Shown piece after piece: positions 700-2,649 of a DNA stretch of 64,000 bases (position 1 is the first letter of the stretch; every line of letters begins with the position of its first letter). A model generated the notes under the pieces. The model saw only the letters and a program-made list of their open reading frames with translations, made no database searches and was not told the origin of the DNA. This stretch comes from Octopus sinensis. Taxonomy: Eukaryota. A program made the position numbers and the translations under genes. The stretch is taken from contig NC_042997.1 of assembly GCF_006345805.1 (NCBI RefSeq), positions 61,318,001 to 61,382,000 of the forward strand. The letters are read 5' to 3'.

Positions 700-1058
700 A
701 CATACATGCACACACACACACACACACACAGGTTGCATTACTTTCAGTTTCCTATTTCTTTATTGCCCACAAGGGGCTAGAAAAGACCTCTTGATCAGAC
801 GGGGCCCCAGGACGATGGGATCCCAGAGCCGCAATGTGCATTCGAGGTGTCGATGTTTACTGAGTCCTGCAATTTGCATCAGTTCATGCAGATAGCCGCG
901 CTCTTCTTTGACAGACGAGCCAAGTGATCCCCCGTCCAGTTTCCATCTACCAAATGCACCCAAAAGGCTTTGATCAGCCTAGGGACAAGAAGCTACTTGC
1001 CTAAGGTGTCACATAGGGCCTGAACTTGAAACCATTTGATTGGGAAGTAAAACTTCTT
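700..1058 (-). mobile_element. tRNA-derived SINE (host) interrupted by the 5.8S chimera
   Basis: The SINE body GGTAGATGGAAACTG|AAAG is split by the insert 753-936. The same family recurs at about 7145, 9805, 10700, 14140, 17890, 27380, 56230 and 58900. Confidence 0.65.
785..936 (-). rRNA. 5.8S rRNA-derived dispersed copy (probable retropseudogene)
   Basis: Reverse complement reads GGATCACTTGGCTCGTCTGTCAAAGAAGAGCGCGGCTATCTGCATGAACTGATGCAAATTGCAGGAC...CATCGACACCTCGAATGCACATTGCGGC...CCCGTCTGA, collinear with the canonical 5.8S motifs (GGATCACTCGGCTCG, GATGAAGAACGC, AATTGCAGGAC, TCGAACGCAC). About 150 nt long; no ITS, 18S or 28S nearby. Confidence 0.85.
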
Positions 1059-1359
1059 ATAGGTCTCATTCATTTAATTAGATGAATATATTGAATTAGA
1101 ATATGTCAGCAATATTTATTAAATGCAAACTGGAATGGAAAATTGTTTATATCTAACAGCATAGGTTTTGGTACCAGTCCAGGTTCTTTGCAATCAGTTA
1201 TAGTTGTTGTTACAAATATCATCTTAATGAAATTGTTGGTTCTTGCCATGATTTATGTTTTATTATTTCTTTTGTGTGTGCATGTATGTATGTCAGTATT
1301 ATCTATATATGTATGTATGTATTTATTGATGTATATATGTGTGTGTGTATGTATGTATA

Positions 1360-1427
<68 letters not shown>

Positions 1428-1498
1428 TCAAAATGTTACCACATGTGAATTGCTGATGATTTTCTTCCTCCGTCTTCCTTTCTATTGGACTTTCATCT

Positions 1499-1533
1499 GT
1501 TTCTGAAGAAGAGTGTTGCTCAAAACATTAAAT
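1499..1533 (+). ncRNA. Decayed minimal hammerhead ribozyme motif (Penelope-like terminal module)
   Basis: GTTT-CTGAAGA-A-GAGT gtt GCTC-AAAA-CATT-AAAT. Stem I, core and stem II are in hammerhead order. GAAACGTT has degraded to AAAACATT, consistent with CpG decay. Confidence 0.5.
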
Positions 1534-2649
1534 CATCTTTCTTTCCTTCCTTGAGCATTTGCTAATACTTTACATGTGCCATGTACTCGCGTTGTTGATT
1601 TTTTTGTGTTTGTTGTTCTTTTTTAGGATTTACTATATATATATATATATATATATGCATGTATATATATATATATATGTATATGTATGTATACATATGT
1701 ATGTACATCTATATATATATATATAGTGTGTGTGTGTATGTATACATATGTATGTGTAAGTGTGTATATATATGTGTGTGTATATATATGCATGTGTATA
1801 TATACATATATGTGTTTATGTATATGTGTGTGTATATATATATATATGTATGTGTGTGTGTATGTGTGTATATATATGTCTAGATATATATGTGTGTATG
1901 TGTGTGTGTATGTAATAACTGCTTATTAGTAATGCTTTAGCTGTGTGAAATCATAAAATACACACATACATGCACTATCTTGATTTACAAGGTATCAGTC
2001 TGAGATTAGTGTAGCTCACTTGAGGTATTAAAATACACCAAATAAAATGTATACTTCACTTTTGTTTCCATATAGTTGTAAATTTGGGAATATATATATG
2101 TGTATGTGTGCTATCTAGATTAGTAATCTTTAGTTATATTAATATATTAGTTATTTTCCCCTCTTTCATCGTCATCATCATCATCACTGTCATCATTGTC
2201 ATTAACACCACCATTAACATATTCAAATTCATCGCCATCATGATCATTAATCATGATCATTATTTTTAAACATTTTTTCCTTGATTAAAAAATGCTAAAC
2301 TTTTGAGCTAGAACAGGCTGCATATTGGCAGAGTCTTTAAAGCCTTATATAAAATGTCTTATAGAATATGTTCCACTCTCTGTGTTCTGAGTTCAAATCC
2401 AACCATGGTTGTCTTTGCCATCCATTCTTTTAGCATTGTTAAAAAGATGTACCATTTTAGATGGTTGGCCTTGGGGTCTCTTTTCTGGTGCTGTGTTCTG
2501 GCAGTGGTGTCTGCAATTACATTGGTGCCATGCTATATTGGCTTAAGTCAATGGTCTTTCATATGGACAACATGGAGATAGTGAGCTTGGAAATAGTGAG
2601 ACCCTCATGGGCAATTACTAGCTTCCCTTAAAGAAAACATTTTACCTGT

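What the first reader, a model, noticed from the sequence alone, without database searches (positions are those of the whole stretch)
745..944. Retroposed 5.8S rRNA / 3'-tail chimera with an 8-bp TSD, inserted into a SINE
Seen: a near-complete 5.8S rRNA sequence (785-936, minus strand) is fused to a 32-nt tail (TTTTCTAGCCCCTTGTGGGCAATAAAGAAATA). The unit 753-936 is bracketed by an exact CAGTTTCC duplication, and the host SINE resumes on the far side. Established: LINE machinery makes RNA chimeras by template switching (U6-L1 type), and SINEs derived from 5S and 28S rRNA exist; 5.8S has no Pol III promoter. Inference: this is either a one-off template-switch chimera or a member of a 5.8S-derived SINE family. 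I recall the tail as a SINE/LINE 3' end but cannot confirm that from this window.
Basis: partly seen in the sequence, partly recalled or inferred. Interest (0 to 1): 0.78.

Follow-up and report, generated by a model that had tools for sequence, protein, structure and literature searches.

The report
5.8S rRNA–SINE-tail chimeric retrocopy
A decayed reverse-transcribed copy of mature 5.8S ribosomal RNA, fused to the last 27 bases of a very common SINE, was pasted as one piece into an older SINE; it is one of at least 22 independently formed 5.8S–SINE fusions in this octopus-like genome, a known copying accident with an unreported RNA partner, and it did not found a new repeat family.

Summary
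Window 787-936 (-) is a 5.8S rRNA copy (Rfam RF00002, 89 bits, E 9e-21). It is followed by a 7-nt linker and by 27 nt identical to the 3' end of an abundant 233-nt SINE ("SINE A"). An exact 8-bp duplication, GGAAACTG on the element strand, brackets the whole unit. Eighteen intact copies of the host SINE ("SINE B") carry that octamer once.

This is a template-switch-type chimera, but not a 5.8S-derived SINE.
- My sample of the 2.72-Gb genome holds at least 22 dispersed 5.8S copies joined at the mature 5.8S 3' end to SINEs: full-length SINE A, partial SINE A tails, or three other SINEs.
- Every junction and every clear TSD differs.
- Apart from CpG hot spots, the only shared substitution is an old rDNA variant.
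- Only one other locus (C19) has a short tail, and its linker and tail subfamily differ.
- U6-SINE A fusions also occur (19 exact-pattern hits, control 0), so this is the U6/L1-type phenomenon acting on a SINE.

The window copy is old: 10.5% diverged, with 11 of 16 changes being CpG transitions. I did not identify the donor LINE. The scan had already noted this class at other loci of this genome. The contig is not human.

The parts
745..752 (.). Target-site duplication, copy next to the SINE tail (CAGTTTCC on +, GGAAACTG on the element strand)
   Evidence: Sequence read. The intact host-type SINE consensus carries this octamer once.
753..779 (-). Last 27 nt of SINE A (TAGCCCC...AAAGAAATA), the retroposon 3' tail
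   Evidence: It has 0 mismatches and is the only occurrence in the window. It is identical to the 3' end of SINE A copies of the GGGCAATAAAG subtype, within the 233-nt consensus built from 34 copies. This tail variant occurs thousands of times in the genome, and nearly all listed matches continue into SINE A body sequence.
780..786 (-). 7-nt junction linker TCTTTTC: either filler or diverged SINE A sequence (the SINE has TCTGTGTT here)
   Evidence: Comparison of the window with the rDNA 5.8S 3' end and the SINE A consensus. Three other loci hold an exact 31-mer that extends 4 nt into this stretch.
787..936 (-). Retroposed mature 5.8S rRNA, 150 nt, from reference position 10 (GACGG) to 159 (GAGAGG), with no ITS sequence on either side
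   Evidence: Rfam RF00002, 89 bits. Identity to the genome's rDNA 5.8S is 89-90%. Of 153 aligned positions, 16 are mismatches and 11 of those are CpG transitions.
937..944 (.). Target-site duplication, copy next to the 5.8S 5' end; it resembles the missing 5.8S 5' end (GAAACCCTG)
945..1060 (-). Host SINE B, the 5' portion upstream of the insertion point
   Evidence: Alignment to the consensus of 18 SINE B copies.
731..744 (-). Host SINE B, the 3' portion after the insertion point, followed by its (TG)n tail at about 703-730
   Evidence: Alignment to the SINE B consensus; sequence.

Best explanation
This is a chimeric retrocopy made in one target-primed reverse-transcription event. A LINE-encoded reverse transcriptase, the one that mobilises SINE A, nicked an old SINE B copy at GGAAACTG. 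It started cDNA synthesis on the 3' tail of a SINE A RNA, or of the LINE RNA that shares that tail. After about 27-34 nt it switched template to the 3' end of a mature 5.8S rRNA and copied that almost to its 5' end. Staggered second-strand cleavage produced the 8-bp TSD.

Shown: the anatomy, the TSD, the SINE origin of the tail, the mature-rRNA origin of the head, and the recurrence and independence of such events.

Inferred: the order of steps, template switching rather than an RNA-level fusion, and the identity of the enzyme.

The insert is an inert, decaying pseudogene. It has no promoter of its own and never amplified.
For: - Structure. The unit is TSD, 5.8S, linker, 27-nt SINE A tail, TSD, with all parts in one orientation. 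The host SINE is intact on both sides and its consensus has a single copy of the octamer.
- Mature rRNA as template. The 5.8S part ends at the mature 3' end GAGAGG and has no ITS1 or ITS2, unlike the 16 rDNA-type copies, where ITS2 follows.
- Recurrence. At least 22 dispersed 5.8S copies are fused at 5.8S reference positions 143-161 (13 of 23 at 157-161) to a SINE: 15 to full-length SINE A; the window, L003 and L026 to 27-51 nt of its tail, and L027 to an internal SINE A fragment; 4 to three other SINEs.
- Independence. All linkers differ. Clear TSDs of 13-19 bp differ and enclose 5.8S plus SINE in L003, L012, L013, L025, L058, L062, L068 and L070.
- No shared lineage. All recurrent substitutions are CpG transitions except T129C. 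That change is also present in old ITS-bearing rDNA fragments (L093, L094), so it is an earlier rDNA variant.
- Same process with U6. The U6 3' end joined to the SINE A head gives 19 exact-pattern loci with variable linkers, control 0.
- Full-length SINE A partners start at the SINE's own 5' end, as expected if the enzyme jumps on reaching the end of its first template.
Against: - The reverse transcriptase was not identified.
- Template switching cannot be told from pre-ligated RNA by sequence alone.
- The predicted hairpin in the tail is not significantly more stable than shuffled sequence (z = -1.9; for L003, -0.25). The idea that the 27-nt tail is a discrete recognition module therefore rests only on two loci sharing that boundary.
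- Most chimeras lack about 8 nt of the canonical 5.8S 5' end, which is unexplained.
Confidence: 0.85

Rival explanations
1. The two RNAs were joined before reverse transcription. 5.8S rRNA was ligated or otherwise recombined to a 5'-truncated SINE A (or LINE) RNA fragment, as proposed for U6/L1 chimeras via the RtcB ligase, and the fused RNA was then retroposed normally.
For: It gives the same final anatomy. The mammalian survey lists RNA ligation alongside template switching as a route to sense-oriented chimeras (bioRxiv 10.1101/2025.02.02.635956, read). The window's SINE part is a 5'-truncated fragment, which could in principle carry a 5'-OH.
Against: - Most partners in this genome are full-length SINE A starting at the SINE's own first bases. 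From general knowledge, primary Pol III transcripts carry a 5'-triphosphate and are not RtcB substrates.
- Variable A-rich or T-rich filler sits at the junctions. That fits non-templated addition or oligoadenylated acceptor RNAs better than clean ligation.
- The 5.8S 3' end is made by exonucleolytic trimming, not by a cleavage that leaves a cyclic phosphate (general knowledge, not tested here).
Confidence: 0.08
2. The unit belongs to a self-propagating 5.8S-headed SINE family (5.8S head plus short LINE/SINE tail) that amplified from a master copy.
For: A second locus, L003 on C19, has the same architecture with the switch at the same 27-nt boundary. Template-switch products are thought to seed new SINEs (PMC5729268, listed).
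Against: - The junction query found 24 candidate places, all scored, and only the window and C19 cover the junction.
- Their linkers differ (TCTTTTC versus GCGAAA), their tail subtypes differ (GGGCAATAAAG versus GGGTAGTAAAG), and their 5' ends differ (L003 keeps GAAACCCTG).
- They share only CpG-site changes and the general T129C variant.
- 5.8S is part of the Pol I pre-rRNA and has no known internal Pol III promoter (general knowledge).
Confidence: 0.03
3. Two separate events: a tailless 5.8S retropseudogene or a DNA-level rDNA fragment, with a 5'-truncated SINE A landing beside it by chance.
For: Dispersed rDNA fragments that keep ITS sequence do exist in this genome (L093, L094, L055).
Against: - One exact 8-bp TSD encloses both parts, and the host SINE consensus has a single copy of it.
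- There is no ITS sequence and no second TSD.
- The same head-to-tail arrangement recurs at more than 20 loci, each within its own single TSD.
Confidence: 0.02

Closest known systems
U6/L1 and other small-RNA/LINE-1 chimeric retrocopies of mammals (U6, U3, U5, 5S, 7SL, tRNA, 28S, Y, 7SK partners)
   Same: A small abundant RNA is fused in sense orientation, at its 3' end, to the variably 5'-truncated 3' part of a retroposon. The whole unit is flanked by one TSD, and many independent events have different junctions (partner list from bioRxiv 10.1101/2025.02.02.635956).
   Different: - The acceptor RNA is 5.8S rRNA. It is absent from that survey (0 occurrences) and from the rDNA-TE review table (PMC10946416).
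- The 3' partner is a SINE with a specific non-poly(A) tail, not L1.
- The host is a mollusc.
- In mammals, nucleolar Pol I rRNAs are reported as under-represented among L1-made retropseudogenes (PMC5322556).
Bipartite and tripartite chimeric retrogenes of Magnaporthe grisea (MGL LINE, Mg-SINE, WEIRD RNA)
   Same: Template-jump chimeras made by a non-L1 LINE and involving a SINE as one component (PMC2104539, listed; abstract only read).
   Different: A different kingdom, different RNAs, and no rRNA component reported in the abstract.
rRNA-derived SINEs (5S-derived SINE3 and relatives; 28S-derived SINE28)
   Same: An rRNA-derived head joined to a LINE-type tail (table in PMC10946416).
   Different: Those are amplified families that share one junction. 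Here there is no amplification: each 5.8S-SINE fusion is a separate event.
De novo SINE birth by template switching (passerine TguSINE1: tRNA plus CR1 tail)
   Same: A short stringent-type retroposon 3' tail is attached to an unrelated small RNA by template switching, the same architecture as the window's 5.8S plus 27-nt tail (PMC5729268, listed).
   Different: The bird fusion gained a Pol III-transcribed head and amplified. The 5.8S head has no such promoter and stayed a single copy.

Membership tests
LINE-mediated chimeric retrocopy (U6/L1 type) | Two unrelated RNA-derived segments joined head-to-tail in the same orientation | tested here: met
   5.8S at 787-936 (-) and SINE A tail at 753-779 (-).
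LINE-mediated chimeric retrocopy (U6/L1 type) | The 3' segment is the 3' end of a LINE or SINE, with variable 5' truncation among loci | tested here: met
   27 nt in the window and L003, about 51 nt in L026, and full-length 233 nt at 15 loci.
LINE-mediated chimeric retrocopy (U6/L1 type) | The 5' segment ends at the mature 3' end of the small RNA | tested here: met
   The window copy ends at GAGAGG (reference position 159). 13 of 23 chimeras end at 157-161, and none continues into ITS2.
LINE-mediated chimeric retrocopy (U6/L1 type) | One target-site duplication encloses the composite | tested here: met
   An exact 8-bp TSD. The consensus of 18 intact host-type SINE copies has one copy of it.
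LINE-mediated chimeric retrocopy (U6/L1 type) | Independent events: junctions and TSDs differ between loci | tested here: met
LINE-mediated chimeric retrocopy (U6/L1 type) | An identified autonomous LINE supplies the RT and shares the tail | not testable with these tools
Earlier scan notes name an L1/Tx1-like LINE; I did not verify this.
SINE (5.8S-derived family) | Multiple copies sharing one head-tail junction, each with its own TSD | tested here: not met
   There are only two short-tail copies, with different linkers and tail subtypes.
SINE (5.8S-derived family) | Shared diagnostic substitutions tracing copies to a master | tested here: not met
   Only CpG hot-spot changes and the old rDNA variant T129C are shared.
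SINE (5.8S-derived family) | Internal Pol III promoter in the head | not tested
   5.8S is processed from the Pol I pre-rRNA (general knowledge). I made no promoter scan.
Functional 5.8S rRNA gene (RF00002 in an rDNA unit) | Lies between ITS1 and ITS2 of an rDNA repeat, with intact sequence | tested here: not met
   It is flanked by SINE sequence. It scores 89 bits against 118-121 bits for rDNA copies and has 16 substitutions.

The most novel reading that the evidence does not exclude
In octopods, 5.8S rRNA may be a preferred second template of the SINE A/LINE reverse transcriptase, alongside U6. The precise features of the chimeras might then report biology that is otherwise hard to see:
- the sharp 5' start at GACGG, about 8 nt inside the canonical end;
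- the A-rich linkers that suggest oligoadenylated 5.8S;
- two independent switches exactly 27 nt from the SINE 3' end.

These could reflect a short or adenylated nuclear 5.8S species, reverse transcription taking place near pre-ribosomes, and a minimal 27-nt tail sufficient for priming.
Probability: 0.15. Interest if true: 0.5.

Novelty: new member of a known kind. Interest (0 to 1): 0.35.

Why it matters
This extends the catalogue of RNAs captured by LINE reverse transcriptases to 5.8S rRNA. It also shows that the U6/L1-type chimera process operates in a mollusc with a SINE that has a specific, non-poly(A) tail. As a set, the chimeras form a dated fossil record of the rDNA: most carry C at position 129 where today's arrays have T. 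They also give natural data on where this reverse transcriptase starts, stops and jumps. The single locus in this window has no sign of function and is not a new element class.

Tried and rejected
- **LINE partner.** I searched the window and all loci for the tail preceded by non-SINE sequence. The only such hits were the 5.8S chimeras themselves; two further hits are preceded by a run of N and cannot be judged. It then returned about 4,900 matches that were nearly all SINE A copies with small indels, so the filter was useless.
- **More loci.** The census is therefore a lower bound.
- **Exact-pattern census.** A search for 5.8S 3' end plus SINE A head found only 3 loci, all already known, because CpG decay destroys the anchors.
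- **Tail hairpin.** The predicted stem GCCC/GGGC is not significantly more stable than shuffled sequence, so I make no structural claim.
- **SINE A origin.** Neither ARAGORN nor Rfam recognises SINE A as a tRNA, so I do not call it tRNA-derived.
- **Literature.** Searches for 5.8S-derived SINEs, 5.8S retropseudogenes or 5.8S chimeras found nothing relevant.
- **Orthologous empty site.** No other cephalopod genome is reachable with these tools, so I used the paralogous SINE B consensus instead.

Full report
**What is in the sequence**

CAGTTTCC lies at 745-752 and again at 937-944. Between them, on the minus strand, is a 5.8S-like stretch followed by the quoted tail. Rfam's 5.8S model (RF00002) matches 785-943 (-) with 89 bits against a gathering score of 42 (E 8.7e-21). 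It is the only Rfam family hit in the 64-kb window.

The window is C1:61,318,001-61,382,000 of a 2.72-Gb assembly with 13,516 contigs. Its repeats and earlier scan notes indicate an octopus genome. It is not human.

**Boundaries, using the genome's own rDNA**

Searching the whole assembly with the 184-nt unit and with RF00002 returned rDNA-type and dispersed 5.8S copies.

- In rDNA-type copies the gene reads ...GAAACCCTG-GACGGGGGATCAC...GTCGAGAGG and is followed by ITS2 (CGGTCAAGAC...). I found 16 distinct such copies.
- Against this reference, the window's 5.8S part is 787-936. It runs from GACGG (reference position 10) to the mature 3' end GAGAGG (position 159), with no ITS on either side.
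- It has 16 mismatches in 153 aligned positions (10.5%), and 11 of them are CpG transitions. It is therefore an old, methylation-decayed pseudogene, which explains 89 bits against 118-121 bits for rDNA copies.
- The Rfam alignment extends 7 nt into the TSD copy only because GGAAACTG resembles the missing 5.8S 5' end GAAACCCTG. The 5' boundary, and hence the TSD length of 7-8 bp, is ambiguous by a base or so.

**The tail**

The 27 nt at 753-779 (TAGCCCC...AAAGAAATA) are the 3' end of a very abundant SINE.

- I built a 233-nt consensus, "SINE A", from 34 copies in the fetched loci.
- The window's tail is identical to the GGGCAATAAAG subtype of it.
- A genome-wide pattern holding the exact 24-nt tail gave about 4,900 matches, and nearly all listed ones continue into SINE A body sequence.
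- The 7 nt between 5.8S and tail (TCTTTTC, 780-786) are either filler or diverged SINE sequence (the SINE has TCTGTGTT here).
- ARAGORN and Rfam do not recognise SINE A as a tRNA, so I do not call it tRNA-derived.

**The host and the TSD**

A consensus of 18 near-full-length copies of the host repeat, "SINE B", reads ...GGTAGACGGAAACTGAAAGAAGCC..., with one GGAAACTG. In the window this octamer occurs on both sides of the insert, and SINE B continues normally at 945-1060 and 731-744, followed by its (TG)n tail. This serves as a paralogous empty site and confirms a single insertion with an 8-bp TSD.

**Is it a family?**

No. They contain at least 22 dispersed 5.8S copies fused at the 5.8S 3' end to a SINE:

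| Partner | Loci |
|---|---|
| Full-length SINE A (15 loci) | L012, L013, L023, L025, L029, L058, L062, L064, L066, L067, L068, L069, L070, L091, L092 |
| Partial SINE A (4 loci) | window (27-34 nt), L003 (27 nt), L026 (about 51 nt), L027 (internal fragment) |
| Three other SINEs (4 loci) | L018, L020, L030 (host type), L060 |

The evidence that these are independent events:

- Every linker differs.
- Clear TSDs of 13-19 bp enclose the composite in L003, L012, L013, L025, L058, L062, L068 and L070, and all are different.
- The 5.8S parts diverge 0.7-11.9% from the rDNA copy, so events were spread over time.
- All substitutions shared by three or more chimeras are CpG transitions except T129C, which is present in 17 of 23. 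That change also occurs in two old ITS-bearing rDNA fragments (L093, L094), so it is an earlier rDNA variant and not the mark of a master element.
- A search with just the window's junction (5.8S 3' part plus tail) had 24 candidate places, all scored. Only the window and C19 (L003) cover the junction.
- Those two differ in linker (TCTTTTC versus GCGAAA), in tail subtype (GGGCAATAAAG versus GGGTAGTAAAG) and in 5' end (L003 keeps GAAACCCTG).

**Mechanism**

The pattern matches the U6/L1 chimeras of mammals: a mature small RNA joined at its 3' end to a variably truncated retroposon 3' part, within one TSD, arising many times independently.

The same genome also has U6 fusions. An exact pattern of the U6 3' end, a gap of 0-50 nt and the SINE A head gives 19 loci with variable, mostly A/T-rich linkers, and none for the reversed control. 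The equivalent 5.8S pattern gives 3.

The likeliest course of events is as follows. The reverse transcriptase that mobilises SINE A primed on the SINE tail at a nick in SINE B. It copied about 27-34 nt, jumped to the 3' end of a mature 5.8S rRNA, and copied it to near its 5' end.

The main rival is an RNA-level fusion before reverse transcription, the route proposed for U6/L1. I rate it lower because most partners here are full-length SINE transcripts beginning at their own first base and separated from 5.8S by variable filler.

The enzyme itself was not identified here. Earlier scan notes attribute the SINE A tail to a site-specific L1/Tx1-like LINE that lands in SINE A. I could confirm only one part of that: SINE A copies tend to be followed by GGTATTTCGTCTG, a motif from SINE A's own body.

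**Unexplained details**

- Twelve of 23 chimeras start at reference positions 7-11, about 8 nt inside the canonical 5.8S 5' end.
- Linkers are A-rich or T-rich, and a few resemble the reverse complement of the tail.
- The window and L003 switch at exactly the same 27-nt boundary, yet the predicted tail hairpin is not statistically supported.

**Comparison with what is known**

- In the searchable literature, chimeric partners of LINE-1 include U6, U3, U5, 5S, tRNA, 28S, 7SL, Y and 7SK RNAs. That survey has no occurrence of "5.8S".
- The review of rDNA-TE relations lists only 5S- and 28S-derived elements.
- Nucleolar Pol I rRNAs are reported as under-represented among L1-made retropseudogenes.
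- Targeted phrase searches for 5.8S pseudogenes or 5.8S-derived elements found nothing relevant.

So the process is known, while the 5.8S partner, the SINE (rather than LINE) 3' part and the molluscan host appear unreported.

**Relation to earlier scan notes**

This scan had already noted the same class at other loci of this genome. One note counts about 23 independent fusions, which my own census matches.

**Verdict**

This is a new member of a known kind, of moderate to low interest as a single locus and somewhat more as a recurrent class.

Noticed in passing
Genome-wide, e.g. G000:C1:42550856-42550901 and C29:10554269-10554314: The U6 snRNA 3' end is fused to the 5' end of full-length SINE A at 19 exact-pattern loci (reversed control 0). 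Linkers are variable, mostly A-rich or oligo-U. This is the classical U6-type chimera, but with a SINE as partner.
   Followed up: partly
SINE A copies in L071-L090 and others (consensus): The 13 bases after the 3' end of SINE A copies have a consensus GGTATTTCGTCTG, which is a motif of SINE A's own body (about positions 50-62). SINE A therefore often lands at one site inside other SINE A copies, forming tail-to-body stacks (also seen in L013/L044, L066, L069).
   Followed up: partly
5.8S reference position 129 across loci; L093, L094: 17 of 23 chimeras and two old ITS-bearing rDNA fragments have C (GATCCCATCG) where present-day rDNA arrays have T (GATCCTATCG). The retrocopies appear to preserve an earlier rDNA variant since replaced by concerted evolution.
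   Followed up: partly
L055 (G000:C5:121030256-121030406): A 5.8S copy with genuine ITS1 upstream is interrupted at reference position 136 by unrelated sequence. This could be an insertion into an rDNA-derived fragment.
   Followed up: no
L092 (G000:C25:15622200-15623200): The 5' 90 nt of the 5.8S part of a 5.8S/A-rich linker/SINE A chimera is repeated in tandem at least three times, with a spacer of about 52 nt.
   Followed up: no
C18 3.8-4.75 Mb (L015, L016, L019, L022, L053, L054) versus other rDNA loci: There are two kinds of rDNA-type unit, with different ITS1 ends (…CGCCCGAGTG versus …ACCGAAACCCTG before GACGG) and slightly different 5.8S and ITS2. The C18 type lacks the canonical 5.8S 5' end and scores lower with Rfam (94-97 bits), so these may be pseudo-rDNA arrays.
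   Followed up: no
L070 (G000:C18:43311506-43311723) and window 937-944: An independent 5.8S-SINE A chimera (L070) sits in another SINE B copy at practically the same site as the window's insert (TSD AGAAACTGAAAGCTC versus GGAAACTG). This SINE B motif may be a secondary landing site for the enzyme.
   Followed up: no
window 1290-1800: Long (TA)n, (TG)n and (TATG)n microsatellite tracts flank the SINE cluster.
   Followed up: no
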